64,000 nucleotides of DNA, taken from positions 62,001 to 126,000 of IMG/VR virus record IMGVR_UViG_3300023174_005338; one strand, written 5' to 3'. Below, one piece after another: positions 10,056 through 38,994 of the stretch (positions are counted from its first letter, which is position 1; every line of letters begins with the position of its first letter). The notes below the pieces were generated by a model, which did not search any database, was not told the DNA's origin, and saw nothing but the letters and a program-made list of their open reading frames with translations. Both the position numbers and the translations under genes were made by a program.

Positions 10056-10772
10056 TTATATTTCGAGATATTGTCTGACATATTTTTTATCTTGTTCAAT
10101 GATCTCAGTTGGATCAACATCGAGTAGTGTTTTGAGTAGATAAGATATGACTTCATAATTATTACGAACCGAAGAAGCAGATATTTTCTTGTTGTTGATG
10201 ATCACATGATCGTTTTTGTCTCTATTGAACTTGGCCGAAACTGCTTGTAAATTCTGTCTACTATCAAGAAATTTATACAAGGGTCTTTCCTTCACCCAGT
10301 CATTGTGTTGTTTTTTTGATGATTTAACAATAGATAATGGAATGATATGGTCATAATGAATATGCCATTTTTTCTTGGCAGTTCTAGCAGGACAACCGTG
10401 CGAGTTAAGGTGTTGATAAGGACTTTGCCAGAATTCACCAAATTCTGGATCAATGATACAAACTTTGCTATCGCAATCTGTGTAAATAACTTTTGAATAG
10501 TCATAAAGATCACCGTGTTTTTTCCTAGCCCGAGCTATAAATTCATCCAATGGTTGGCGCCTTGCTTGTGCTGCTTTTTGCTTACCTCTAGCAGGGTGTC
10601 CTTGTTTTTGTAAGTGACCCATTGGTGCTTGCCAGAATTCGCCAAACTCGGGATCGATAATTTTGACTTTGTCATGCATTTTAGTGTAAACTGTCTGTGA
10701 GTAGTCGTAAAAATAATTGTGTATTTTGTTTGCTCTTGCAACGAATTCTTGAGTGGTAATTTGTTTAGGCAT
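10056..10772 (-). mobile_element. HNH homing endonuclease with two DUF723-like repeats
   Basis: Two (F)xxRA.K.HxxxYDYS.V.Y...KV.IIDPEFGEFWQ.P..HL...G.P repeats, then YDHIIPLS...NLQAVSAKFNRDK. Confidence 0.8.
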
Positions 10773-12706: not shown

Positions 12707-13097
12707 TCAGCGGTTGCACTGCCACGTGGAACTGGAACCCGTGGGCAATCCCGAAGTGTCGGTGATCATTGCCGGTGTGTATGGAGGCGGAAAACTTTTC
12801 AAGTCCGTTGAGTTCAATATCAACGTTGACTTATTGAAGCCTTTCACTATTGAAATTGAACTTCGAAATAAAACATACTCCACTGATCATGAAACTGCTG
12901 TGATCGTCAAACAGTTACAAATTGACGATATTGATCTTGTGCCCAGATTTGACTATCTAGCTGTGTACAACAACGATCACAACAACACCAACCCTACCAG
13001 CTACCTGGGTTTTAATGGTAAGTGGACACTAACTATTGATAGGCCTTTTTATCAATGGTTGCATCAGACCACAGCACAAGGCTGGCTTATAAGTTAG
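12675..13097 (+). CDS. Hypothetical protein
   Basis: 140-aa ORF coupled to the radical SAM gene. Confidence 0.65.
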   Translation: MKTYSDLQAIDQRLHCHVELEPVGNPEVSVIIAGVYGGGKLFKSVEFNINVDLLKPFTIEIELRNKTYSTDHETAVIVKQLQIDDIDLVPRFDYLAVYNNDHNNTNPTSYLGFNGKWTLTIDRPFYQWLHQTTAQGWLIS

Positions 13098-13155
13098 TGC
13101 GCACTAACCCTTTGATTTTGCTACGGTTGACCAAAAATGCCCGATTTGCTATACT
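13093..13155 (+). promoter_or_regulatory. 16-bp palindrome plus early promoter
   Basis: GTTAGTGCGCACTAAC (13093-13108), then TTGACC-N17-TATACT (13127-13155). Confidence 0.75.
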
Positions 13156-23546: not shown

Positions 23547-24215
23547 ATGAAAGTTCAATTACTAAGTTACAGTCAACCCACCGCAGAATTTGAAAACATG
23601 GGCATCGCAGATGCCCAGGAACTTATTGCGTATTGTGCCCGGGTCAGCAATCCTGACAACCAACTCAATAAAGACACATCAGAGAAGCTGATCAGATACT
23701 TGGTCAAGCACCAACACTGGAGCCCACTTGAAATGGTCTCGGCCTGTATTGAAATAACCACCACCCGAGACATCGCCCGACAAATCCTGCGACATAGAAG
23801 CTTCAGCTTCCAAGAGTTTTCTCAACGCTATGCTGACCCAATCAAAGATCTCAATTTTGTTACAAGAGATGCACGACTTCAAGACACAAAAAATAGACAG
23901 AACAGTATAGCCACCAATGACGAACGCTTGCAAACAGATTGGGAACAACATCAACGCCAGGTTATTGCCTATGCAAAAATCGCCTACAATTGGGCTATTG
24001 CCCGAGGCATAGCCAAAGAACAAGCTCGAGCTGTTTTGCCCGAAGGACTTACCGAAAGCCGATTATACATGAATGGCACCCTGCGCAGCTGGATACACTT
24101 TATTGAATTACGTTCAGCGAATGGCACACAACTTGAACATCAACAAGTGGCCAGAGCCTGTGCTGAGGTCATTGCCAGAGTGTTTCCATTGGCCACAGAG
24201 TTCATTGGTGACTAA
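23547..24215 (+). CDS. thyX: Flavin-dependent thymidylate synthase
   Basis: HWSPLE, RQILRHRSFSFQEFSQRY, EQARAVLP, LRSWIHFIELR. Confidence 0.96.
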   Translation: MKVQLLSYSQPTAEFENMGIADAQELIAYCARVSNPDNQLNKDTSEKLIRYLVKHQHWSPLEMVSACIEITTTRDIARQILRHRSFSFQEFSQRYADPIKDLNFVTRDARLQDTKNRQNSIATNDERLQTDWEQHQRQVIAYAKIAYNWAIARGIAKEQARAVLPEGLTESRLYMNGTLRSWIHFIELRSANGTQLEHQQVARACAEVIARVFPLATEFIGD

Positions 24216-25185: not shown

Positions 25186-25399
25186 ACCTGGCTACATACA
25201 TCATTGCACTGTGCCTTGGACTGAAAGAAAGAATCCCATGTTCTACTGGGACAACCTGTGTGCCAGTGCGGTAGAACTGTTTGGCTTGCCTGGCGACAGA
25301 TACATCACTGACATCAGTGAAAAGTCAATGACCTGGAGTTTTCGCAGTGATCAGGACGCTGTGTTGTTTAGATTAAAGTTTGCCGAGGCCCTGACATGA
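25151..25399 (+). CDS. Hypothetical protein
   Basis: ORF in operon; start uncertain. Confidence 0.6.
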   Translation: MTDISRRPILREPGYIHHCTVPWTERKNPMFYWDNLCASAVELFGLPGDRYITDISEKSMTWSFRSDQDAVLFRLKFAEALT

Positions 25400-25800
25400 T
25401 GGAAAATTTGTATTTTGCTTATGGTGCCAACATGCACCCAGGACAAATGCACTGGCGTTGCCCCAACGCACAGGCCCAGGGAGCATTCATATTGCGTGAC
25501 TGGGAACTGAAATTCTACTGCCATGCCACCATTGAACCAAAGAAAGATGCAGAATGTGCCGGCGTGTTGTGGAGTCTCACCGCCGAGTGTGAACAGGCAC
25601 TGGACAGATTTGAAGGATTTCCCTACTATTATACCAAACGCACCTGGATACAAGACGGCGTGCAGTTTTTCTTTTACGAAATGAATGACCCTAAAACCGG
25701 CACACCAGGTTCGGGCTATGTGCGTGACATAGTGGAAAGCTATGACTTTTGGAACATACCCCGACAGCGCCTGAACCACTTGCTCTATGACCCAGCTTAG
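25396..25800 (+). CDS. Gamma-glutamylcyclotransferase-like protein
   Basis: YFAYGANM, ALDRFEGFP..Y. Confidence 0.85.
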   Translation: MMENLYFAYGANMHPGQMHWRCPNAQAQGAFILRDWELKFYCHATIEPKKDAECAGVLWSLTAECEQALDRFEGFPYYYTKRTWIQDGVQFFFYEMNDPKTGTPGSGYVRDIVESYDFWNIPRQRLNHLLYDPA

Positions 25801-26054: not shown

Positions 26055-26804
26055 ATGAGCATAGACAATTTTGTGGTCCTAGACAGTGTTTATGGAAAAT
26101 TTATTGTGGCACGCACTTGTTTGTTCCAGGCCGAGGCCTTGGTCAAAACGGGTCGTACTCACATTGAGTCGGAATTAAACAATATTTTCGCGCTGGTTGA
26201 CACCTTGCCCGATGATGCTGTTATCGTTGATGGCGGCGCCAACATTGGATTTTTTACTGTGCCTGTGGCCCATAGAACACAAGGTCGCAATAATAGAATT
26301 ATCGCATTTGAACCACAACGACAATTGTTTCAGGCACTGGGTGGTAGTTTGGCCATCAACGGATATGATCATGTGTATCTACACAACTGTGGACTCGGTG
26401 CTGAACCTGGTAAGGCACAACTACCTGCCGTAGACTACAGCATAGCGCAAGACTTTGGCACAGTTTCATTAAATGACAAAACCACGGTTGACGAACATGG
26501 GTGGATGACAGATCGCGTAGTCGATGTGACCAGCGTAGATGCCATGGCGTTGCCTAGACTAGATTTTTTCAAGCTGGATGTAGAAGGTTATGAAGTTCCG
26601 GCACTGACTGGTGCCCTTAACACCATACAAAAATACCGACCTTGGATCTGGGTAGAATATTTTATCACCGGAGCGGAACCAATCAAACAAGCTCTGTGCT
26701 CTGTTGCAGATTATGATTATTACATAGCGGATTACCAAAACATGCTGTGCATGCCCCGAGAACAGGCCAATCGGGTCAATGTGTCTGGATTACAAAAGGT
26801 CTGA
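26055..26804 (+). CDS. FkbM family methyltransferase
   Basis: VDGGANIG, IAFEPQ, FFKLDVEGYE. Confidence 0.9.
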   Translation: MSIDNFVVLDSVYGKFIVARTCLFQAEALVKTGRTHIESELNNIFALVDTLPDDAVIVDGGANIGFFTVPVAHRTQGRNNRIIAFEPQRQLFQALGGSLAINGYDHVYLHNCGLGAEPGKAQLPAVDYSIAQDFGTVSLNDKTTVDEHGWMTDRVVDVTSVDAMALPRLDFFKLDVEGYEVPALTGALNTIQKYRPWIWVEYFITGAEPIKQALCSVADYDYYIADYQNMLCMPREQANRVNVSGLQKV

Positions 26805-27925: not shown

Positions 27926-27929
27926 CAGT

Positions 27930-28160
27930 AACGTGTTCTGTAGCAGGAACTAGTCTGACCCGGACGATTGAACTGGAGTAGCTACCAGGGGTGGCAGTCT
28001 CCCAACCTAGAGGCCGCTGGCAATGCGAAAACGGTCCCCGCGTGGAGCGGATGGTGAGGTAGAGATTGTGGTCTTGCTGAGTCCTATCGGGCAACCAAGA
28101 TGTGCTGTCATTGGATTATGGCACGGATTTCTACTATAGTAACCGCCGGGGGACGCAGAG
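27930..28160 (+). ncRNA. Putative structured non-coding RNA, family unassigned
   Basis: GC-rich gap with no convincing ORF and nested helices GTCCCC/GGGGAC, GCGG/CCGC, GTAGAGATT/GATTTCTAC closing two hairpins (TCTTG/CAAGA; GTGCTGT/ATGGCAC); strand assumed from the flanking operon. Confidence 0.55.
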
Positions 28161-28166
28161 CATTAT

Positions 28167-28219
28167 GTTAGTGAACACTAACATCAGTAGTTGACAAAGT
28201 CCAGCATTTGTAGTATAAT
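28167..28219 (+). promoter_or_regulatory. 16-bp palindrome plus promoter
   Basis: GTTAGTGAACACTAAC (28167-28182), 8 bp, then TTGACA-N17-TATAAT. Confidence 0.75.
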
Positions 28220-28305: not shown

Positions 28306-29367
28306 ATGGCACAGCGCCTTACCCGCAAACTTACCGATGTGGCCGCGGAAGTTGAAAAGCAAATCAAGGCCCACTACAACATCACGCAACGAGAACTTGA
28401 TTCTTTCCGTGAACGAGCTCAAGCAAAACATAAATTGGGTTTAGATTTTCCTGAATCAAAAATGGTTCCTATTGATGATCTTTGGATTGACTACGAAGTC
28501 CAACGAGATGTCTTGCACAAACACATCATCAGTATCATGAAAAATTGGGATCCAAGAATTTGTAGTCCTGTGTCGGCTTGCCGTTTGCAAGATCGCGATC
28601 GCAACGATACATATGATGGTCAGCACAGAACCATCTCGGCTACTATTTTAGGCTATAAAGAAATTCCCGGAGCAGTGGTTCATACCGATGATCCAAACTT
28701 TGCTAGCCTGGCCTTTGAAATGCTCAATGACACTGGTGTAAAACGTTTAGGTCCAGGAGACTTGCATCGTAACGCCTTGGTTCGTTACAAAAATGGCAGC
28801 CGAGAAAGCCGGAATGTGTGTGCTCGCACTTTGCAAGATCAATTTGATAATTTACAAATCGACCTGCAAGACAAAGGTTCCCGGTCCAGCGATAATTTAC
28901 GTGGCGATCATGATTACTTCTTTAGTCATTTCAAGTACGCATACAAAGGCATTGAGATTGACGAATCCGGCAAGGTATTGTATGCCATACTGGAGGCTAT
29001 AAAAACAGTGTTTCCTTTGCAAGAAGAAATCGATCAAGGTGTGTTTATTGGGTTGTGCGAATTGCAACGCCTAAACAGCACAAACTCACGCAACAAATTG
29101 CCCGACGGTTGGATGAAAATTTTATTGGAATCTGCCAAGACTACTTTTAAAAGTAGTCACTTGATACATGCCAAGGCAAAAATCCAATGGGAACACAGTC
29201 ATCCAGGTGCAGGCTGGGTGGCACCCACTGCCATGAGCAACTTCCTGCGTGAGATGCACTTACGCAACGGTGGTCAGTTAAATCTCCCCTATCACGGCGA
29301 AGGTGCCAAGGTTGGTATTGTGGATGGTAATGTTGCTCCAGGACTGTTTCCACAAGGAGGCGAATAA
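28306..29367 (+). CDS. ParB/Srx-superfamily protein with DGQHR motif
   Basis: LWIDYEVQRDV...WDPRI...YDGQHRTISA...AFEMLND; AAAGGA RBS. Confidence 0.8.
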   Translation: MAQRLTRKLTDVAAEVEKQIKAHYNITQRELDSFRERAQAKHKLGLDFPESKMVPIDDLWIDYEVQRDVLHKHIISIMKNWDPRICSPVSACRLQDRDRNDTYDGQHRTISATILGYKEIPGAVVHTDDPNFASLAFEMLNDTGVKRLGPGDLHRNALVRYKNGSRESRNVCARTLQDQFDNLQIDLQDKGSRSSDNLRGDHDYFFSHFKYAYKGIEIDESGKVLYAILEAIKTVFPLQEEIDQGVFIGLCELQRLNSTNSRNKLPDGWMKILLESAKTTFKSSHLIHAKAKIQWEHSHPGAGWVAPTAMSNFLREMHLRNGGQLNLPYHGEGAKVGIVDGNVAPGLFPQGGE

Positions 29368-29368
29368 T

Positions 29369-29848
29369 ATGAAATGCGTGTTAAAAGAAACTGTATTTGG
29401 AGAACGGCTAAATGAACAAATGTCACTGAGTGATGCAATTGATTTGCTAAGTGACCTAGACCTCATTAACATTGGTGAGTTGGGTGAAAAAGCAGTAAGC
29501 ATACAAACTGGAATCAGTCAATGTGCCAAAAATACTCCTAACATTGATCTGCTCAACGGTATTCAAATCAAAACCGCTCAAACAAATCCTGATAATCCAA
29601 CAAACGGATTTCTCAAAGCCTGGTTCACTATCAAGAATTGCACGGCTCCAATTGCTGTTATTGTTACAGAACGTGTTACAAAGAAACAATACTTTTTTTA
29701 TATACCGTACTCAGGATACAAACATATGAATGCCAATGCAGTCAGTATTCCATTTGACGAGCGTGGTAGACCATACACTAAAAATGAATGGTGGTATTAT
29801 AACGTACCAACCTGGGCAGATCTTTGCAAAAAGGCATCGACATGTTAA
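29369..29848 (+). CDS. Putative PD-(D/E)xK nuclease
   Basis: GELGEKAV...PNIDLLNGIQIKTA (E...D...QxK). Confidence 0.55.
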   Translation: MKCVLKETVFGERLNEQMSLSDAIDLLSDLDLINIGELGEKAVSIQTGISQCAKNTPNIDLLNGIQIKTAQTNPDNPTNGFLKAWFTIKNCTAPIAVIVTERVTKKQYFFYIPYSGYKHMNANAVSIPFDERGRPYTKNEWWYYNVPTWADLCKKASTC

Positions 29849-30399
29849 AAGAAAGTCTTGATCAATTTACGGCACCCATCTACGGCAAAACTCAGCGCAC
29901 CCCCGATACCTATCGCACAGTGGCCGCTTACTGTAAGAAGAATCTGGATCGCTTGGTCAACAACTACAATGAAGTAGTAAATGATCAACAGTTATTGCGT
30001 GAAATCCGTAATGATATTGACACATACTTGCGTCGCTATCATGAATACTGCATCCAGCAACGTGATGGCATGCTGGCTCACTATCATGAAATAGGCGCCG
30101 ACACGGATTGTGATTTTGAACATCTGATACCAGCGGCTCGTATTCGTGATTTACTTCTTGCCGGCGCCATTACAGTAGAACAAGCTCTTAATGCTCCTAC
30201 AGTGAGATTGAGTCGGGCCAAACACCGGGCACTCAAAGATGCAGGTTGGTCCGCCAAAACTCCCAACATGTGGTTGCCGTTTGAACGCTATACCAATGTG
30301 TTTGGAGCTACTTACCAAACCCACGACGGAACGGCTGTTGATCCGTTGACATGGACCTTGGAAAAGCATTACAATTACTTTCAACACCTTGTGTTATGA
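29842..30399 (+). CDS. Hypothetical protein with HNH-like EHxxP motif
   Basis: DCDFEHLIP followed by a predicted strand/helix (PTVRLSRAKH). Confidence 0.55.
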   Translation: MLKESLDQFTAPIYGKTQRTPDTYRTVAAYCKKNLDRLVNNYNEVVNDQQLLREIRNDIDTYLRRYHEYCIQQRDGMLAHYHEIGADTDCDFEHLIPAARIRDLLLAGAITVEQALNAPTVRLSRAKHRALKDAGWSAKTPNMWLPFERYTNVFGATYQTHDGTAVDPLTWTLEKHYNYFQHLVL

Positions 30400-31457
30400 A
30401 CAATTACTTAGAAACCATCCGAACCAAGTACGACATCAAGGACTATGTTGAAACGCCTGTGACCATACCTGATTTGCCTACTGAAGGCATTGTGCTGATA
30501 GTAGGAACTTCGGGTTCAGGCAAGAGCACGATCCTGCGCAGACTTGGTCACACCCAAGCCGTGACGTCGAGTCCTTGCAGTACTGTGATAGAAAACTTTT
30601 CTACCCCTGAACGCGGCGAGGAATTACTTCTAGCCGCAGGCTTGCGTAGCATACCCACTTGGTTCCGGCCACCTAATACATTGAGCAATGGTGAATATCA
30701 CAGATTTGAAATGGCCATGGCCATAGATCAAGGTATCCGTTGCATTGACGAATTCACTAGCGTAGTTGACCGCGACACAGCCAAGAGCTTGGCCTACAGT
30801 GTGAGGAAGTATTACAATCAGAATCCTGGTGTGCTATATATTGCCAGTTGCCACAGAGACATAACGGAGTGGTTGGATCCTGACTGGGTCTACGACACAG
30901 ACCTGCAGAAACTTGATAATCGGAGGTCACTTCTTCGACTGGGGACAAGACCAAAACTCACACTCACCATCCGAAGCACAACTCCGGACTATTGGCGATA
31001 TTTCAGTAAATATCATTATCTAGATACCCGGATGAGCCGTAGCGTTCATTGCTATGTGCTGTTGCTAGGTGACAAGCCCATTGGTTTCCATGCTGCAATA
31101 CATTCAACCAATAGAGATATTCACAGTTACTGGCGTGGACACAGGACTGTGATACTGCCTGAGTTTCAAGGCATGGGTATAGGCACTGCGTTCAGTGATG
31201 CCATAGCACAGATCTATGTGGATCGCGGCCTAAGATACTTTAGCAAGACTGCTCATCCAAGTTTTGGTGAACACAGAGAAAAGAGTCCCTTATGGCGGCC
31301 AACCAGTACCAACCGTAAGAGTCGAAAAGGCAGTTATCTGCTCAAGGATGGCTCAATCAGAGCCATGCCCGGCTACGGTGGTAATGCAGAAATCGCTCGA
31401 AGAGATGCAGATCGTGTGTGTTACAGCCACGAATACATTGGCGTCAAGAAGAACTGA
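30396..31457 (+). CDS. ABC-type ATPase fused to GNAT acetyltransferase
   Basis: Walker A GTSGSGKS, signature LSNGE, Walker B IDEFTS, H-loop SCH; C-terminal WRYFSKYHYL...VILPEFQGMGIG. Confidence 0.88.
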   Translation: MNNYLETIRTKYDIKDYVETPVTIPDLPTEGIVLIVGTSGSGKSTILRRLGHTQAVTSSPCSTVIENFSTPERGEELLLAAGLRSIPTWFRPPNTLSNGEYHRFEMAMAIDQGIRCIDEFTSVVDRDTAKSLAYSVRKYYNQNPGVLYIASCHRDITEWLDPDWVYDTDLQKLDNRRSLLRLGTRPKLTLTIRSTTPDYWRYFSKYHYLDTRMSRSVHCYVLLLGDKPIGFHAAIHSTNRDIHSYWRGHRTVILPEFQGMGIGTAFSDAIAQIYVDRGLRYFSKTAHPSFGEHREKSPLWRPTSTNRKSRKGSYLLKDGSIRAMPGYGGNAEIARRDADRVCYSHEYIGVKKN

Positions 31458-31752
31458 GTTCGCATTTTAGAGTTTGATAGTCTTGTATGGTACTGACCGT
31501 TGGTGTGGTCCGAGCATCATAATGGCTTTCCATGGTCTGCCATTCTTCTTCGTCCACAGCTGAAGTCACAATCAATTCATATTCGTGACCATCGGCACTA
31601 TACAATTTTATAGTTTCAAATCCAAATCCGCCTGCGGCAGCGTTTTTGGCCGCTTCAGCAAGACCCTTCAAGGCCTGACGATCTGCTACTATGTAACCGG
31701 TGCCTCGAGGACCGGTGGGTGGATACATGTGTAATCTTCCTGTGGGTTTCAT
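31444..31752 (-). CDS. Hypothetical protein
   Basis: ATGA-coupled to dnaE. Confidence 0.65.
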   Translation of the reverse strand: MKPTGRLHMYPPTGPRGTGYIVADRQALKGLAEAAKNAAAGGFGFETIKLYSADGHEYELIVTSAVDEEEWQTMESHYDARTTPTVSTIQDYQTLKCELSSS

Positions 31753-33422
31753 TGATAGTGTTCTATGTCCTTTAAGTCTAGCTTCTTGTGTTTATACACT
31801 GTAACATATTCTGAATTATTTTTGTACCCCAGTTTGCCCTGACCCCAGAGTATGGGTTGATCATGAAAGCTAGCCGCATGTGGTAGGATTACATCAAGAT
31901 AACGACCATTGCCAGTACCTAGTGTAACAAAGGTTATGTATTTCTTTCGGTCGGATTTGAATACTCTATAGTTGGCTACTAGGCCGCAGAACTCCACAGT
32001 TCCTGGGCCACGTCGTTCTTGACAGGCCGGAATGAATCTTTGACTTGACCAGCGACCGTTGGCACGCAGTTCGGCCACTTCACCACCTTCGGTCACAGCA
32101 GGCACAGCACCAGCCAACTTGGCTTCTTGCCAGTAAACCCAGCGGGCGTAGCTACCTTGGCAGTGCTTGAGAGCCGCACGCCAGAACTGTTCAGGATTGT
32201 GTGCTTTCTGATAGGCCAAGGCCCAGATCAATCGGCCCAGGTTGATGGCATGTGCCCTACACAGTCCGAAATGGCTGAGCTCACGTAGTGCTAAAAATAT
32301 TTCTTCTTTTTTGGGATGGTCTCCTACTAGCACCATGAACTCAAAGATCTTTTCTTCATCCTTTTTGGCAAAGGCTCGCCGCCACATGTCCGCAGTGTAT
32401 TGATCACAACCCAAGATTTCTGAAATCAGCTCTATGGCATCGTCCTCAAACACTATGGTATCTTGCAGTTGATCTGTCGACCAGTCTTGGAACGCTGACG
32501 CACGACGCCGACCCATGGTAGCCACTGGTCTTATAAGTGCTGTGGCCAGCACACAATCACTTCTAGTTCTTGGACGAATGGCCTTGCACAATCGTTTCAT
32601 GGCTGGGCTTTCGGCCTGTGTAACACCCAGCACATTGCCTGAGCTCAACAACTCTGCTGTGGCTTCATCTTCTTCGGGATAGTCCAACAAGTCACGCTGA
32701 TCTATCTCCCACAGTTGACTGAGTCCGCGATTGGCCAAGATATCGATCTTGAAATGTTCAAGATCTTCTATTTCATACTTGTCCAAAAGTATTTGATTGG
32801 TGCCGTTGATTAAACTTTTTGGTACGGCACGATCAAAGATCAGGATACCGCCGCAGTGTTTTGAAATACAACGTTTTTTGCCCATGAGTTTTTGTGTGAG
32901 CCGTTCAGCATCCTCCACATAGTCGGGCACTACTTCTTCAAACCGGAAGTTTCTTTTCAGTGTGCCCTTGGCACCCAGGCGCTTGGCTGCTTCTCTGCGT
33001 GCTGATTTTTCTTTGTACATCACATAGTTGCTTACCCTGGCACTCTGTCCAGGCCAGCGCCGGAATATCCTGTTCATGACTTCTTCCTGTTGCCAGTGCG
33101 GGAAGTCTAGATCGATGTCGGGCAGGTCATCACGTTTGGGATTCATAAAGCGTGACAAGGGTATGCGTTCCTGTATAGGATCCACATCCGAAATGCCCAT
33201 GAGCCAGCATAGCAAACTACTGCCAGCTGATCCTCGAGTGATGTGTGGAATGTCTCGTGTGAGATCCAGGATTTCTCTCACACGCAAAAAATGTCGTGCG
33301 AAATTCAAGTTGGCTATGATTTCTAGTTCTTCTTCAAGCCGTGTTGCGTAAGCTGGATCGTTGGGTAGTTGTCGTGTAAATTTTGAGATTAGTATTTCTA
33401 GTTCGTCATATCTGCTTTTCAT
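31749..33422 (-). CDS. dnaE: Compact DNA polymerase III alpha-like (family C) protein lacking the PHP domain
   Basis: RGSAGSSLL, RFMNPKRDDLPDIDLDF, KHCGGI, FKIDIL, FGLCRAHA, C-terminal OB-like strand set. Confidence 0.9.
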   Translation of the reverse strand: MKSRYDELEILISKFTRQLPNDPAYATRLEEELEIIANLNFARHFLRVREILDLTRDIPHITRGSAGSSLLCWLMGISDVDPIQERIPLSRFMNPKRDDLPDIDLDFPHWQQEEVMNRIFRRWPGQSARVSNYVMYKEKSARREAAKRLGAKGTLKRNFRFEEVVPDYVEDAERLTQKLMGKKRCISKHCGGILIFDRAVPKSLINGTNQILLDKYEIEDLEHFKIDILANRGLSQLWEIDQRDLLDYPEEDEATAELLSSGNVLGVTQAESPAMKRLCKAIRPRTRSDCVLATALIRPVATMGRRRASAFQDWSTDQLQDTIVFEDDAIELISEILGCDQYTADMWRRAFAKKDEEKIFEFMVLVGDHPKKEEIFLALRELSHFGLCRAHAINLGRLIWALAYQKAHNPEQFWRAALKHCQGSYARWVYWQEAKLAGAVPAVTEGGEVAELRANGRWSSQRFIPACQERRGPGTVEFCGLVANYRVFKSDRKKYITFVTLGTGNGRYLDVILPHAASFHDQPILWGQGKLGYKNNSEYVTVYKHKKLDLKDIEHYQ

Positions 33423-33564: not shown

Positions 33565-33696
33565 ATGGAACAATATGTGTGCCAGGTATGTGGTCACGTG
33601 CATGACGAAACCACCGAAGGTGCTTGGGAAGATCTTTCAGACAACTTCATTTGTCCAGAATGTGGTTGTTTCAAAGATGAATATGTTATAATGTAA
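33565..33696 (+). CDS. Rubredoxin
   Basis: Manual translation MEQYVCQVCGHVHD...WEDLSDNFICPECG; AGGAG RBS. Confidence 0.9.
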   Translation: MEQYVCQVCGHVHDETTEGAWEDLSDNFICPECGCFKDEYVIM

Positions 33697-33730: not shown

Positions 33731-34168
33731 ATGGCAAAATCCGTAAAAGGAACCCGTACCGAGAGCAATCTCAAAGAAGCATTTGCTGGTGAGAGCCAAG
33801 CAAACCGTCGTTATTTGTATTTCGCAAACATGGCCGACGTGGCAGGGGCACCAGACGTAGCCGCAGTGTTCCGTAGCACAGCCGAAGGTGAAACAGGACA
33901 TGCCCATGGTCACATGGAATACCTGATCACTGGTGGAGCCGGCGAACCTGGTACCAGCATGCCTGCCAGCACTGTGGCTGAAGCCCTAGAAGCTGCCATC
34001 CACGGCGAAACACATGAGTACAGTGACATGTATCCTGGCATGGCCAAGGAAGCACGTGACGAAGGTTTTGACGAAATCGCTGACTGGTTTGAAACACTAG
34101 CCAAGGCAGAACGCAGCCACGCCAACAAGTTTACCAAGACCTTAGCGGCTCACAAGGCCGAGCAGTAA
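33731..34168 (+). CDS. rbr: Rubrerythrin (ferritin-like domain only)
   Basis: [31 protein letters not shown] di-iron motifs. Confidence 0.93.
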
Positions 34169-34488: not shown

Positions 34489-34736
34489 ACATACGATTAC
34501 GATTCGCCTGGTTGCCTACTCAAATGACTAGTGGACAACGCATATGGTTAACACATTACTGGCATCATCAATATCTGTATGATGAAACCACAGGACGGCC
34601 GCCTTTGTGGGGTCGGCACTTTGAGTTTACAGAAACCAAGGCCGAACAAACTTTTCGAGTCTTAAAAGAAAGTGTGTTACATAATCGAAATGTTTGGAAC
34701 GAATACGAACTGACCAAAAAGGATAAAAATGCTTGA
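34485..34736 (+). CDS. Hypothetical protein
   Basis: ATGA-coupled; FAWLPTQM...IWL. Confidence 0.65.
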   Translation: MNIRLRFAWLPTQMTSGQRIWLTHYWHHQYLYDETTGRPPLWGRHFEFTETKAEQTFRVLKESVLHNRNVWNEYELTKKDKNA

Positions 34737-35361
34737 AACAATATGTGAAACACTGGTAGAAGCTTATCGCCGCAACTGGATTACCAGTCGGGATGGCAAC
34801 GTAAGTATTCGTCATCACGATAGAGATCATTTCTACATTACGCCATCCAGTGTACGCAAGCAGACTCTTCAACCAGATCAGTTCAAGAAGATTGGCATCT
34901 TGGACGATGTGTGGAGAGATGGTCCAGAATGGATAGAGTTGCCCTACACTGACATCAGTGCCAATCTAAAACCGTCGGGAGAGATCCCCTTGCATTTTGG
35001 CCTACAGAAACGTATGGGTCAGCACTCGGAAGAAGTGCGTGTAGTGCTCCATGTACATCCTACCTACTCGGTGGCGGCCATGCATGCGGGCATACAGTTA
35101 AATGAGTTGGTGCGAGATTTTCCAGAACTTTCAAGATACACACGAGTGGCCGCCAATGTTCCAGATGTGCCACCAATCAGTCAAGAACTAGCAGATCAAT
35201 GTTTTGAAAAGTTAGAACTGGATGATTTAGGCAACATAGCCTACGACATCGTGGGCATACGAGGACATGGAGTAGTGGCTGTTGATACCAATCCCTGGCG
35301 TGCCTATGAGCATATTGAAAGATTAGAACACATCTGCAAGATAGTGCTGGCCAGCAAATAA
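34729..35361 (+). CDS. Class II aldolase/adducin family protein
   Basis: SRDGNVSIR, PSGEIPLH, VLHVHP, GHGVVAV. Confidence 0.9.
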   Translation: MLETICETLVEAYRRNWITSRDGNVSIRHHDRDHFYITPSSVRKQTLQPDQFKKIGILDDVWRDGPEWIELPYTDISANLKPSGEIPLHFGLQKRMGQHSEEVRVVLHVHPTYSVAAMHAGIQLNELVRDFPELSRYTRVAANVPDVPPISQELADQCFEKLELDDLGNIAYDIVGIRGHGVVAVDTNPWRAYEHIERLEHICKIVLASK

Positions 35362-38941: not shown

Positions 38942-38994
38942 GTTAGCGGGCACTAACCTGCCCGGTTGACCAGAATTTACCGATTTGCTATAAT
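38942..38994 (+). promoter_or_regulatory. Imperfect 16-bp palindrome plus early promoter
   Basis: GTTAGCGGGCACTAAC, 8 bp, then TTGACC-N17-TATAAT; promoter nearly identical to the one at 38610. Confidence 0.75.

What the first reader, a model, noticed from the sequence alone, without database searches (positions are those of the whole stretch)
28306..31457. Four-gene operon: DGQHR ParB-like protein, PD-(D/E)xK nuclease, HNH-like protein and ABC-ATPase-GNAT fusion
Seen: four tightly coupled ORFs (1-nt gap, then 7- and 4-nt overlaps) behind one promoter carrying the palindromic operator. Motifs are YQR-like EVQRD plus DGQHR, E..D..QxK, FEHLIP, and Walker A/B with LSNGE plus GNAT motif A. Known: DGQHR/DGQQR ParB-fold NTPases pair with EHxxP HNH domains in GmrSD and SspE modification-dependent nucleases, and ParB-like proteins and ABC-GNAT fusions recur in predicted phage DNA-modification loci. 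Inference: either a split GmrSD-like system used against the host or competing phages, or a modify-and-restrict pair in which ABC-GNAT acylates phage DNA and the nucleases cut unmodified DNA. I do not know of this exact arrangement being described.
Basis: partly seen in the sequence, partly recalled or inferred. Interest (0 to 1): 0.75.

Follow-up and report, generated by a model that had tools for sequence, protein, structure and literature searches.

The report
Composite phage locus, not one system
The four overlapping genes are real, but comparison with about 80 related huge-phage genomes shows three separate things: a conserved two-gene core (a ParB-like nucleotide-binding protein and a small enzyme-like partner), a mobile selfish nuclease gene between them, and an optional enzyme gene after them.

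Summary
Four same-strand ORFs (28306-31457) have a 1-nt gap and 7- and 4-nt overlaps. They lie behind a perfect sigma70-type promoter with a recurring 16-bp palindrome, and all quoted motifs are present.

The four-gene-system interpretation is not supported. The window comes from a 337-kb uncultured huge phage.

- **ORF1 and ORF3:** in 80 related contigs they stay together, same order and strand, in all 79 informative loci and in distant relatives.
- **The slot between them:** it is empty in 18 loci. In 61 it holds one or two genes from at least 8 unrelated families. Six have nuclease-family HMM matches, ORF2's has a nuclease motif, and one single-locus family is unassigned. ORF2's family fills it in 8 relatives and also occurs elsewhere without ORF1/ORF3. 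ORF2 is best read as a free-standing homing-endonuclease-like insert.
- **ORF4 (ABC-ATPase+GNAT, PHROG 11143):** it is present in 8 of 56 informative relatives and absent from five near-complete relative genomes. It needs at least 5-6 gains or losses on the ORF1 tree, usually has its own promoter inside the end of ORF3, and occurs alone in many unrelated phages. The Aravind group had already predicted it to acylate DNA bases.
- **Folds:** ORF1 has a confirmed ParB/Srx fold. ORF3 (pLDDT 97) matches no Pfam model or solved structure and shows only an HNH-like motif and topology.

A GmrS/GmrD-like NTP-gated nuclease is my preferred reading of the core pair. It is unproven.

The parts
28167..28182 (.). 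16-bp palindrome GTTAGTG-AA-CACTAAC, an operator-like site 8 nt upstream of the -35 box
   Evidence: The genome holds 5 copies against 0 for the reversed control. Every copy lies 5-26 nt upstream of a sigma70-like -35. The motif is present upstream of ORF1 in 12 of 76 relatives. The binding protein is unknown.
28191..28219 (+). Sigma70-type promoter TTGACA-17-TATAAT (12/12)
   Evidence: A promoter scoring at least 10/12 lies about 80-130 nt upstream of ORF1 in 68 of 76 relatives.
28306..29367 (+). ORF1: ParB/Srx-fold NTP-binding-type protein (QR...D-G/A-QHR motifs) with helical C-terminal domains; conserved core gene 1
29369..29848 (+). ORF2: small PD-(D/E)xK restriction-endonuclease-like protein; a free-standing homing-endonuclease-like insert in the ORF1/ORF3 intergenic slot
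   Evidence: E37, E40, D60, Q66 and K68 are invariant. Atlas feature neighbours are PvuII, Bsp6I, MamI and PDDEXK_16 clusters, which are leads only. Only 18 relatives were found in 5.8 billion proteins. The family is in the slot in 8 of 79 relatives, and the slot is otherwise empty or filled by other gene families. Relatives occur in other contexts.
29842..30399 (+). ORF3: 185-aa partner of ORF1; a helical hairpin plus an alpha/beta core carrying invariant Y81, E/D93-H94, P97, P119, R149-Y150 and H176, with D/H/N at position 128; conserved core gene 2; catalytic type unproven (His-Me-finger-like motif)
   Evidence: AF2 model pLDDT 97, pTM 0.89. The family has 112 clusters at 50% identity, and none of 66 members matches Pfam. 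No significant PDB, BFVD or Swiss-Prot fold match was found; AFDB-cluster matches are weak. It is paired with ORF1 in 79 of 79 loci and in distant relatives.
30346..30375 (+). Internal sigma70-like promoter TTGACA-18-TACAAT (11/12) inside the 3' end of ORF3, 21 nt upstream of the ORF4 start
   Evidence: At the same position it scores at least 10/12 in 6 of 9 loci that carry ABC-GNAT, against 6 of 71 that do not.
30396..31457 (+). ORF4: single ABC-type ATPase domain fused to a GNAT acyltransferase (PHROG 11143); an accessory gene
   Evidence: PHROG 11143 at 2.3e-81. Pfam Acetyltransf_1 at 1.3e-5, above its cut-off, and ABC_tran at 1.1e-4. Homologues occur in 79 phage records across many hosts. 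It is present in 8 of 56 informative relatives with at least 5-6 gains or losses, and absent from 5 near-complete relative genomes.

Best explanation
The locus is a composite of three independent elements that happen to be co-transcribed early from host-type promoters.

**1. A conserved two-gene module, ORF1 + ORF3.** ORF1 is a ParB/Srx-fold protein whose D-(G/A)-QHR motif sits where ParB carries its phosphate-binding GERRxRA box. I infer that it binds and probably hydrolyses an NTP. ORF3 is its obligate partner. It has an enzyme-like set of invariant polar residues arranged as (E/D)H-x2-P ... strand ... helix with D/H/N, as in a His-Me (HNH-type) finger. My preferred mechanism is inferred and not shown. 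I propose that the two form an NTP-gated DNase analogous to the two-subunit GmrS/GmrD form of GmrSD type IV enzymes. It would be made early to act on host or competitor DNA.

**2. ORF2.** This is a free-standing homing-endonuclease-like selfish gene of the PD-(D/E)xK type. It has lodged in the few-nucleotide gap between the two core genes, a site that different nuclease genes invade in different relatives.

**3. ORF4.** This is an accessory ABC-ATPase+GNAT enzyme that usually has its own promoter inside the end of ORF3. It belongs to a widespread phage family previously predicted to add an acyl group to a DNA base in an ATP-dependent way.

**Shown:** the gene structure, promoters, motif conservation, ParB fold, strict ORF1-ORF3 linkage, slot polymorphism, and dispensability of ORF2 and ORF4.

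**Inferred:** NTP binding by ORF1, nuclease chemistry of ORF3, physical interaction of the pair, homing by ORF2, and the DNA substrate of ORF4.
For: **Composite nature**
- ORF1 and ORF3 are adjacent, in the same order and strand, in 79 of 79 informative related loci.
- The pairing holds in distant relatives. In L152, ORF1 is 41% identical (hhalign 7.5e-64) and ORF3 27% identical. It also holds in TARA contig L149. In L150, a 396-aa EGQH ParB-like gene overlaps the ORF3-like gene.
- The slot between them is 2-26 nt in 18 loci. In 61 loci it holds inserts from at least 8 unrelated families.
- Six of those families match nuclease HMMs. They are HNH (PF13392), endonuclease VII/HNH-like (phrog_3322 3e-23), an HNH-NUMOD homing endonuclease (phrog_655 2.7e-44), MvaI/BcnI-like (PF15515 2e-8), phrog_681 and phrog_1111. 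ORF2's family has only a nuclease motif, and the L030 family is unassigned.
- The same insert families also appear upstream of ORF1 or downstream of ORF3 in other loci.
- ORF2 relatives P0250 and P0246 lie in loci with no ORF1 or ORF3.

**ABC-GNAT**
- It is present in 8 relatives and scattered on the ORF1 tree, needing at least 5-6 changes.
- It is absent from five 317-374 kb relative genomes.
- An internal promoter is enriched where it is present, 6 of 9 against 6 of 71.
- It stands alone in unrelated phages.
- An earlier prediction of DNA-base acylation is reported in PMC7824862.

**ORF1 fold**
- Searches support the ParB/Srx fold.
- Phage DUF6551-type ParB-fold proteins bind ATP or CTP in vitro (bioRxiv 10.1101/2025.10.10.680097).

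**ORF3**
- Position 128 is D40/H16/N5/E3 of 66.
- One AFDB cluster hit is named HNH endonuclease (E 3.7e-3).
Against: **Against the nuclease reading of the core pair**
- No HNH, GmrSD_C or GmrSD_N HMM matches ORF3 or ORF1, even at E up to 10.
- No solved His-Me finger appeared in any fold search of ORF3. These whole-chain searches were dominated by its helical hairpin.
- The complex prediction gave no answer.
- No self-protecting DNA modification gene was found in the genome. N6_N4 methylase and TGT were absent with valid controls. The Tet_JBP search was uninformative because its controls did not respond.

**Against 'ORF4 is unrelated'**
- Whenever ABC-GNAT occurs in this clade (9 of 9, window included) it lies directly downstream of ORF3, or one inserted gene away. 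Some functional tie cannot be excluded.

**Against pure selfishness of ORF2**
- It is translationally coupled within the operon.
- No cleavage or homing data exist.
Confidence: 0.55

Rival explanations
1. ORF1 is a ParB/KorB/Noc/DndB-like NTP-gated DNA-binding switch, either a regulator or a DNA organiser. It would recognise the 16-bp palindromes next to early promoters, including its own. ORF3 would be a non-nuclease partner or modulator, as KorA is for KorB. No DNA cleavage would be involved.
For: - ORF1's best structural matches are ParB, Noc and KorB. With Noc and ParB the alignment runs through residues 50-257, covering the nucleotide-binding domain plus the following helical (DNA-binding) domain.
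- A 16-bp palindrome recurs 5 times, always beside promoters, and one copy sits 8 nt upstream of ORF1's own -35.
- DndB, the best-known DGQHR protein, is reported to be an ATP-modulated repressor (cited in PMC10853773).
- ORF3 has no detectable nuclease homology.
Against: - Only 12 of 76 relatives have the palindrome upstream of ORF1, so autoregulation through it is not a conserved feature.
- ORF3's invariant residues (E/D-H, R-Y, H, Y) look catalytic and not structural.
- No HTH model matched ORF1.
- Any other DNA-binding protein of this 337-kb phage could bind the palindrome.
Confidence: 0.2
2. All four genes form one modify-and-restrict (or split GmrSD plus helpers) system. ABC-GNAT acylates phage DNA, and the ORF1/ORF2/ORF3 nucleases destroy unmodified DNA.
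For: - The four ORFs are tightly packed on one strand behind an early promoter.
- ABC-GNAT, when present in the clade, is always immediately downstream of ORF3.
- The ABC-GNAT family has been predicted to modify DNA (PMC7824862).
Against: - 48 of 56 informative relatives keep ORF1-ORF3 without ABC-GNAT. Five near-complete genomes lack it entirely, so the nuclease pair would be lethal to its own phage under this model.
- ORF2's family is in the slot in only 8 of 79 loci and is replaced by unrelated gene families or by nothing.
- ABC-GNAT in other phages has no ParB- or ORF3-like neighbour.
Confidence: 0.07
3. The genes in the ORF1/ORF3 slot, ORF2 included, are interchangeable effector subunits of the ORF1-ORF3 system. 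This would be effector swapping as seen in conflict systems, and not selfish homing endonucleases.
For: - Most inserts are nuclease-like: six of the eight families by HMM match and ORF2's by motif. All are on the same strand and translationally coupled.
- In one distant lineage the slot holds a CTP-synthase-N-like gene that overlaps both neighbours. That looks functional and not selfish.
Against: - 18 of 79 loci have no insert.
- One insert is a textbook HNH-NUMOD homing endonuclease (phrog_655 2.7e-44).
- The same insert families also sit at other intergenic sites around the pair.
- ORF2 relatives occur far from any ORF1/ORF3.
Confidence: 0.1
4. ORF1-ORF3 acts on nucleotides or in DNA or nucleotide modification and not in DNA cleavage. 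For example, a ParB/Srx-fold kinase or NTPase (like SerK, SbnI, Srx, DpdB or DndB) could work with ORF3 as a transferase or hydrolase.
For: - Local matches of ORF1 to the ParB-fold kinases SbnI and SerK show 27-32% identity over about 75 residues at rmsd 2.7-3.3 A.
- The only NCBIfam hit is SbnI, at a weak E of 0.11.
- A CTP-synthase-N-like gene is embedded in the pair in L151 and L152.
- The pair lies next to nucleotide-metabolism genes such as ThyX.
Against: - No DpdA/TGT or N6_N4 DNA methylase was found in the genome, so two of the known partners of modification-linked ParBs are missing. The Tet_JBP search was uninformative.
- The CTP-synthase-like insert is confined to one distant lineage.
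- The SbnI and SerK similarity covers only the shared ParB core.
Confidence: 0.08

Closest known systems
GmrS/GmrD, the two-subunit form of the GmrSD type IV restriction enzymes; fused relatives are BrxU, SspE and Eco94GmrSD (family knowledge from memory; BrxU is PDB 7p9k)
   Same: A ParB/Srx-type NTPase component with QR...DGQ(Q/H)R motifs is paired with a smaller component carrying an (D/E)H..P His-Me-type motif. The two are adjacent, translationally coupled genes.
   Different: - Neither the GmrSD_N nor the GmrSD_C HMM matches.
- ORF1 is structurally closer to ParB, Noc and KorB than to BrxU.
- ORF3 has an N-terminal helical hairpin and extra invariant residues (R149-Y150, H176, Y81), with no detectable homology to HNH families.
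- The pair is encoded by a phage as a clade-wide core gene pair, not by a host defence island.
- Its substrate is unknown.
Phage DUF6551 / orphan ParB-CTPase-fold proteins, and DndB (the DGQHR ParB-like regulator of dnd operons)
   Same: They share the ParB/Srx nucleotide-binding fold with a DGQHR-type P-motif followed by helical domains. DUF6551 clusters are the nearest named Atlas neighbours. Members bind ATP or CTP in vitro (bioRxiv 10.1101/2025.10.10.680097).
   Different: - No Pfam DUF6551 or ParB_N hit and no NCBIfam DGQHR or DndB hit.
- No dnd-type context is visible among the neighbours annotated.
- The obligate ORF3 partner has, to my knowledge, not been described for those families.
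Free-standing homing endonucleases of large phages, such as the T4 seg and mob genes (from memory)
   Same: - The small nuclease genes show presence/absence polymorphism at one intergenic site between two highly conserved genes.
- Different nuclease families occupy the same site in different relatives.
- Copies also lie at other sites.
   Different: ORF2 is a type II restriction-endonuclease-like PD-(D/E)xK protein and not GIY-YIG or HNH. It has no promoter of its own and is read through from ORF1. No cleavage or homing data exist.
Phage ABC-ATPase+GNAT fusion family (PHROG 11143), predicted to acylate DNA bases by Iyer et al. 2013 as cited in PMC7824862; functional analogy to Mu Mom (GNAT-fold DNA adenine acyl-modifier) and to TmcA (ATPase+GNAT cytidine acetyltransferase; from memory)
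   Same: ORF4 matches PHROG 11143 over its full length (2.3e-81) and has every ABC and GNAT motif. It is 32-38% identical to homologues in Aeromonas PX29, Tenacibaculum pT24, Nonlabens P12024S and Burkholderia phiE255.
   Different: Nothing distinguishes it from the family except its fixed position after ORF3 in this clade. As far as the searched literature shows, the family's substrate has never been demonstrated.

Membership tests
ParB/Srx superfamily (ORF1) | N-terminal alpha/beta nucleotide-binding fold | tested here: met
ParB/Srx superfamily (ORF1) | Phosphate-binding motif at the strand-to-helix junction (Box II equivalent) and nucleotide binding | tested here: inconclusive
   D104-x-QHR108 lies at the end of strand 100-104 and the start of helix 106-114 in the model, and it is invariant. 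Nucleotide binding itself cannot be tested here.
GmrSD type IV restriction enzymes (ORF1 as GmrS/DUF262) | Match to the GmrSD_N (PF03235) profile | tested here: not met
GmrSD type IV restriction enzymes (ORF1 as GmrS/DUF262) | QR ... DGQ(Q/H)R sequence motifs | tested here: met
   IDYEVQRD and YD(G/A)QHRT are invariant or nearly invariant in 26 relatives.
GmrSD type IV restriction enzymes (ORF3 as GmrD/DUF1524) | Match to the GmrSD_C (PF07510) profile | tested here: not met
   No hit for ORF3. The only weak genome hit lies elsewhere, at window 10209-10370 on the minus strand, E 0.04. None of 66 family members matches any HNH-type Pfam model.
GmrSD type IV restriction enzymes (ORF3 as GmrD/DUF1524) | Modification-dependent DNA cleavage controlled by NTP | not testable with these tools
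   This needs biochemistry.
His-Me finger / HNH nucleases (ORF3) | beta-beta-alpha-metal core with a catalytic His at a strand end and a metal ligand (H/N/D) in the helix | tested here: inconclusive
   **For:** the model has strand 90-94 ending in E93-H94, strand 120-124, and helix 125-133 with position 128 as D40/H16/N5/E3 of 66. One AFDB cluster hit is named HNH endonuclease at E 3.7e-3.

**Against:** no solved His-Me finger was found by Foldseek or VIA. hhalign against two in-session HNH-type alignments gave 0.1% probability.
DndB / DGQHR-domain proteins (ORF1) | Match to the NCBIfam DGQHR or DndB models | tested here: not met
   The only NCBIfam hit is SbnI at E 0.11.
DndB / DGQHR-domain proteins (ORF1) | Linkage to dndCDE or other phosphorothioation genes | not tested
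   None was seen among the annotated neighbours. No genome-wide search for dnd genes was run.
Free-standing homing endonuclease (ORF2) | Presence/absence polymorphism at a fixed intergenic site between conserved genes, with other nuclease families at the same site | tested here: met
   18 loci are empty and 61 are occupied by at least 8 families. ORF2's family is in the slot in 8 of 79.
Free-standing homing endonuclease (ORF2) | Nuclease fold | tested here: inconclusive
   E37, E40, D60, Q66-x-K68 and E101 are invariant. Atlas neighbours at scores 0.91-0.93 are PvuII, Bsp6I, MamI and PDDEXK_16 clusters, which are leads only. No Pfam, PHROG or PADLOC hit was found.
Free-standing homing endonuclease (ORF2) | Cleavage of the insert-free allele and biased inheritance | not testable with these tools
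   This needs experiments.
Phage ABC-ATPase+GNAT family, PHROG 11143 (ORF4) | Full-length profile match plus ABC (Walker A, signature, Walker B, H-loop) and GNAT motif A | tested here: met
   PHROG 11143 matches residues 4-351 at 2.3e-81. Acetyltransf_1 scores 25.8 bits, above its 20.7-bit cut-off. The motifs were read in the translation.
Phage ABC-ATPase+GNAT family, PHROG 11143 (ORF4) | Acylation of a DNA base | not testable with these tools
   This is a literature prediction only (PMC7824862).
Known anti-phage defence systems (PADLOC) | Profile match of any of the four proteins at a meaningful level | tested here: not met
   ORF1-3 have no hits. ORF4 has only P-loop-level matches to mad3 and mad8.

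The most novel reading that the evidence does not exclude
The ORF1-ORF3 pair is a previously undescribed two-component enzyme system that is a core feature of a large clade of uncultured freshwater and marine huge phages. A DGQHR ParB-fold NTP switch would control ORF3. ORF3 is the founding member of a virus-wide protein family (112 clusters at 50% identity; Atlas clusters of 430 and 1371 members) with no Pfam model and no solved structural relative. It could be a new catalytic scaffold and not a divergent HNH. The locus is also a natural hot spot where many different homing nucleases compete for one site.
Probability: 0.3. Interest if true: 0.65.

Novelty: new variant of a known kind. Interest (0 to 1): 0.45.

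Why it matters
**Annotation.** Tight packing and overlapping stop/start codons in a phage do not make a functional operon. Here a selfish nuclease gene and an accessory modifier are threaded into and behind a conserved pair.

**Biology.** The conserved pair is the interesting part. It is a clade-wide, early-expressed ParB-fold protein with an obligate small partner of confidently predicted but unmatched structure. ParB-fold proteins outside chromosome segregation are an active question, including NTP specificity, activation of DNA dioxygenases, DndB and GmrSD. A phage-core ParB-plus-enzyme pair would give a tractable new example.

**Homing endonucleases.** The slot between the two genes is a clean natural experiment in homing-endonuclease turnover, with at least 8 families at one site.

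**ORF4.** It adds nothing new to an already predicted, still uncharacterised family. It does show that the family is dispensable and mobile within a clade.

Tried and rejected
- **Family scans.** Pfam, PHROG, NCBIfam and PADLOC scans of the four proteins were informative only for ORF4. ORF1 gave a weak PHROG ParB hit at 1.5e-3.
- **Cultured phages.** Nucleotide and protein searches found no relative of ORF1 or ORF3. The nearest DnaE-like polymerase match is an uncultured 484-kb phage.
- **ORF3 fold searches.** Six libraries gave no characterised match. They were PDB by Foldseek, VIA wide, VIA second look, BFVD, Swiss-Prot AFDB and Atlas. The long helical hairpin dominates the alignments, and I could not submit the C-terminal core alone.
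- **PDB profile searches.** Profile searches with A1 and A2 returned only spurious hits.
- **hhalign.** The ORF3 family against two in-session HNH-type alignments was negative.
- **Complex prediction.** ORF1+ORF3 scored 0.00, with the verdict 'no answer'. I do not use it as evidence either way.
- **Known partners of modification-linked ParBs.** Searches of the phage genome for N6_N4 methylase and TGT found none. The Tet_JBP search was uninformative because its controls did not respond.
- **Recurring ParB/ABC-GNAT pairing.** I rejected this idea. None was seen in PX29, pT24, P12024S or phiE255.
- **Structured RNA.** The intergenic stretch 27926-28165 is not unusually structured: z is -0.68, with no Rfam family and no tRNA.
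- **Literature.** Iyer et al. 2013 and Krishnan et al. 2020 are not held. The ABC-GNAT prediction is therefore cited second-hand from PMC7824862.
- **Tool limits.** With the ORF1 alignment it found four contigs binned into MAGs, which are probably phage contigs.

Full report
**Source and observation.** The window is positions 62001-126000 of a 337,119-bp virus record with direct terminal repeats. It has no cultured relatives. The closest match to its DnaE-like polymerase is an uncultured 484-kb phage.

The four ORFs are exactly as described:

| ORF | Coordinates | Junction with the previous ORF |
|---|---|---|
| ORF1 | 28306-29367 | - |
| ORF2 | 29369-29848 | 1-nt gap |
| ORF3 | 29842-30399 | 7-nt overlap |
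| ORF4 | 30396-31457 | 4-nt overlap |

A perfect TTGACA-17-TATAAT promoter lies at 28191-28219. Such promoters are over-represented in the window: 12 within one mismatch against 0.37 expected. A promoter scoring at least 10/12 lies upstream of ORF1 in 68 of 76 relatives.

The palindrome just upstream of the -35 box (core 28167-28182) is one of five copies of GTTAG(T/C)G-NN-C(A/G)CTAAC in the genome. The reversed control pattern gave none. All five copies lie 5-26 nt upstream of a sigma70-like -35. One addition: a second promoter-like site (30346-30375, 11/12) lies inside the end of ORF3, just before ORF4.

**Are the four genes one unit?** A scan of viral contigs with ORF1 and ORF3 returned 80 loci each, from a large clade of 320-375 kb phages. 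Mapping all four proteins onto the 80 ORF1 loci by tblastn gave three results:
- ORF1 and ORF3 are adjacent, in the same order and strand, in 79 of 79 informative loci. The eightieth locus is cut off at the contig end.
- An ORF2 homologue (40-48% identity) is present in only 8 loci.
- ORF4 is present in only 8 loci.

Even the closest relative (L006, ORF1 97% identical) carries a different gene in ORF2's place.

**The slot between ORF1 and ORF3.** The gap is 2-26 nt in 18 loci. In 61 loci it holds one or two same-strand ORFs of 117-330 aa. These inserts fall into at least eight mutually unrelated clusters. HMM scans assign six of them to nuclease families:
- HNH (PF13392; 21 loci).
- Endonuclease VII/HNH-like (phrog_3322, 3e-23; 23 loci).
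- An HNH-NUMOD homing endonuclease (phrog_655, 2.7e-44).
- An MvaI/BcnI-like restriction fold (PF15515, 2e-8).
- Two further 'endonuclease' PHROGs (phrog_681 and phrog_1111).

The other two are ORF2's own family, which has only a nuclease motif, and the single-locus L030 family, which matched nothing.

The same insert families also turn up at other intergenic positions around the pair.

ORF2's family is tiny: 18 proteins among 5.8 billion. It keeps an invariant E37/E40...D60...Q66-x-K68 pattern. Its nearest named Atlas neighbours are PvuII, Bsp6I and MamI-type restriction endonucleases. Two members (P0250, P0246) lie in contigs with no ORF1 or ORF3 nearby.

This is the classic signature of free-standing homing endonuclease genes invading one site between two conserved genes. 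I conclude that ORF2 is such an insert and not a subunit of a system. Cleavage and homing themselves remain untested.

**ORF4.** It has all ABC motifs and GNAT motif A. It matches PHROG 11143 end to end (2.3e-81) and Pfam Acetyltransf_1 above its cut-off.

Homologues at 29-38% identity occur in 79 phage records from very different hosts. In four of these phages the neighbours were inspected, and none is ParB-like or ORF3-like. In phiE255 the gene sits beside a formyltransferase, after the tail-fibre genes. By my inference this is the position that mom occupies in Mu.

The family was already predicted to perform an uncharacterised acyl modification of a DNA base (PMC7824862, citing Iyer et al. 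2013, which I could not read).

Within this clade ORF4 is dispensable:
- Five near-complete relative genomes that carry ORF1-ORF3 lack it entirely.
- On an ORF1 tree, its presence needs at least 5-6 gains or losses among 48 rows.
- Where present, it is always directly after ORF3, or one inserted gene away.
- The promoter-like site in the end of ORF3 scores at least 10/12 in 6 of 9 such loci, against 6 of 71 loci without ORF4.

This suggests that ORF4 travels as a cassette with the ORF3 3' end and is expressed on its own. An obligatory modify-and-restrict coupling is contradicted.

**The conserved core: ORF1.** The AF2 model (pLDDT 84) has a ParB/Srx nucleotide-binding domain at residues 50-146:
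- The top 50 Foldseek PDB hits are almost all ParB/Srx superfamily members: Noc, KorB, ParB, PadC, SbnI, serine kinase and sulfiredoxin.

The invariant D104-x-QHR108 lies at the strand-to-helix junction where ParB has its phosphate-binding box. No Pfam or NCBIfam model matches. The nearest named Atlas families are DUF6551 and ParB_N. Phage DUF6551-type ParB-fold proteins bind ATP or CTP in vitro (bioRxiv 10.1101/2025.10.10.680097). More than 1,000 close homologues exist, and none is annotated.

**The conserved core: ORF3.** An exhaustive search found 112 clusters at 50% identity, almost all stand-alone proteins of about 185 aa. None of 66 diverse members matches any Pfam model.

The model is excellent (pLDDT 97, pTM 0.89). 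It shows a long helical hairpin followed by an alpha/beta core. Invariant or nearly invariant residues are Y81, E/D93, H94, P97, P119, R149, Y150 and H176. Position 128 is D, H, N or E in 64 of 66 sequences.

The order of elements is that of a His-Me finger with an inserted pair of helices: a strand ending in E-H, then P, then a second strand, then a helix carrying D/H/N.

Nothing beyond motif and topology supports this reading:
- No solved structure matched.
- No BFVD or Swiss-Prot model matched.
- AFDB-cluster hits are uncharacterised proteins at E 5.6e-5 to 1e-2, with a single one named 'HNH endonuclease'.
- Profile-profile comparison with two HNH-type alignments was negative.

**Depth of the pairing.** Distant ORF3 relatives (27-30% identity) are still preceded by an ORF1-like gene:
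- L152 has a 362-aa DGQHR protein, hhalign 7.5e-64.
- TARA contig L149 has an ORF1-like C-terminus.
- In L150, a 396-aa EGQH ParB-like gene overlaps the ORF3-like start.

At 25% identity (P0226) the upstream gene is not ParB-like. In L151 and L152 the slot holds a CTP-synthase-N-like gene (PF06418, 2.9e-39) that overlaps both neighbours. This is an unexplained hint of a nucleotide connection.

**Mechanism.** I commit to the following model. ORF1 is an NTP-binding switch. ORF3 is its catalytic partner. Together they most resemble the two-subunit GmrS/GmrD arrangement of GmrSD enzymes (recalled from memory). They would be made early to act on DNA.

- **Shown:** the fold of ORF1, the conservation patterns, and the strict linkage.
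- **Inferred:** NTP binding, interaction of the two proteins, DNase chemistry, and the target.
- **No evidence either way:** the complex prediction gave no answer.

The main rival is a ParB/KorB/DndB-like regulator or DNA organiser that uses the promoter-proximal palindromes. ORF1's closer structural resemblance to ParB, Noc and KorB than to BrxU favours this rival. Against it, the palindrome is present upstream of ORF1 in only 12 of 76 relatives, and ORF3's conservation looks catalytic.

No N6/N4 methylase or TGT gene is present in the genome. The Tet_JBP search was uninformative. Two of the known partners of modification-linked ParBs are therefore missing.

**Verdict.** The four-gene system is not supported. 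ORF2 and ORF4 are ordinary for large phages, a selfish nuclease and an already predicted accessory modifier. The ORF1-ORF3 pair is a new variant of the 'ParB-fold NTPase plus small enzyme' theme, and ORF3's family is uncharacterised. Interest is moderate.

Noticed in passing
window 13093-13108, 28167-28182, 38942-38957 (also genome positions 40702 and 173428, outside the window): The 16-bp palindrome GTTAG(T/C)G-NN-C(A/G)CTAAC occurs 5 times in the genome against 0 for the reversed control. Each copy lies 5-26 nt upstream of a sigma70-like -35 box. It is probably the site of a phage- or host-encoded regulator of a promoter subclass.
   Followed up: partly
window, whole length (for example 4093, 14549, 19962, 26805, 28191, 38966, 40639, 42693, 43957, 57389, 59951): Near-consensus sigma70 promoters (TTGACA-17-TATAAT within one mismatch) are about 30-fold over-represented: 12 against 0.37 expected. 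Nearly all are on the + strand, which fits a large early region read by host RNA polymerase.
   Followed up: partly
L151:539-1174 and L152:5369-6004 (distant relatives): A 211-aa CTP-synthase N-terminal-domain-like gene (PF06418, 2.9e-39) sits between the ORF1-like and ORF3-like genes and overlaps both. This may link the ParB-fold protein to CTP or to pyrimidine amination. It was seen in one lineage only.
   Followed up: partly
window 30346-30375: A promoter-like site is embedded in the coding 3' end of ORF3. It is strongly associated with the presence of the downstream ABC-GNAT gene across relatives (6 of 9 against 6 of 71). This suggests that the ORF3 end and ABC-GNAT move together as a cassette.
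   Followed up: yes
window 10209-10370 (- strand), inside a 246-aa ORF: This is the only match to the GmrSD_C (DUF1524) profile in the genome. It is weak (E 0.04, below the cut-off). It may be a separate HNH-type gene.
   Followed up: no
window 23547-24215, 25396-25800, 26055-26804, 33565-33696, 33731-34168, 34729-35361: The neighbourhood is rich in auxiliary metabolic genes: ThyX, a gamma-glutamyl cyclotransferase-like protein, an FkbM-family methyltransferase, a rubrerythrin (with a rubredoxin-like 43-aa ORF read by eye) and a class II aldolase. A 557-aa DnaE-like polymerase piece lies at 31749-33422 on the minus strand.
   Followed up: partly
L158-L161 (genome contigs): ORF1 homologues (64-73% identity) lie on contigs binned into freshwater MAGs named Haliscomenobacter, Chitinophagales, Polynucleobacter and a deltaproteobacterium. 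These are probably mis-binned phage contigs. At most they are a weak hint towards a Bacteroidota host.
   Followed up: no
L001:5754-6998 (Aeromonas phage PX29) and L003:5062-5676 (Burkholderia phage phiE255): In unrelated phages the ABC-GNAT gene lies near a borderline N6-DNA-methylase-like gene (PX29) and next to a formyltransferase after the tail-fibre genes (phiE255). This context fits a DNA-modification role for the family but does not prove it.
   Followed up: no
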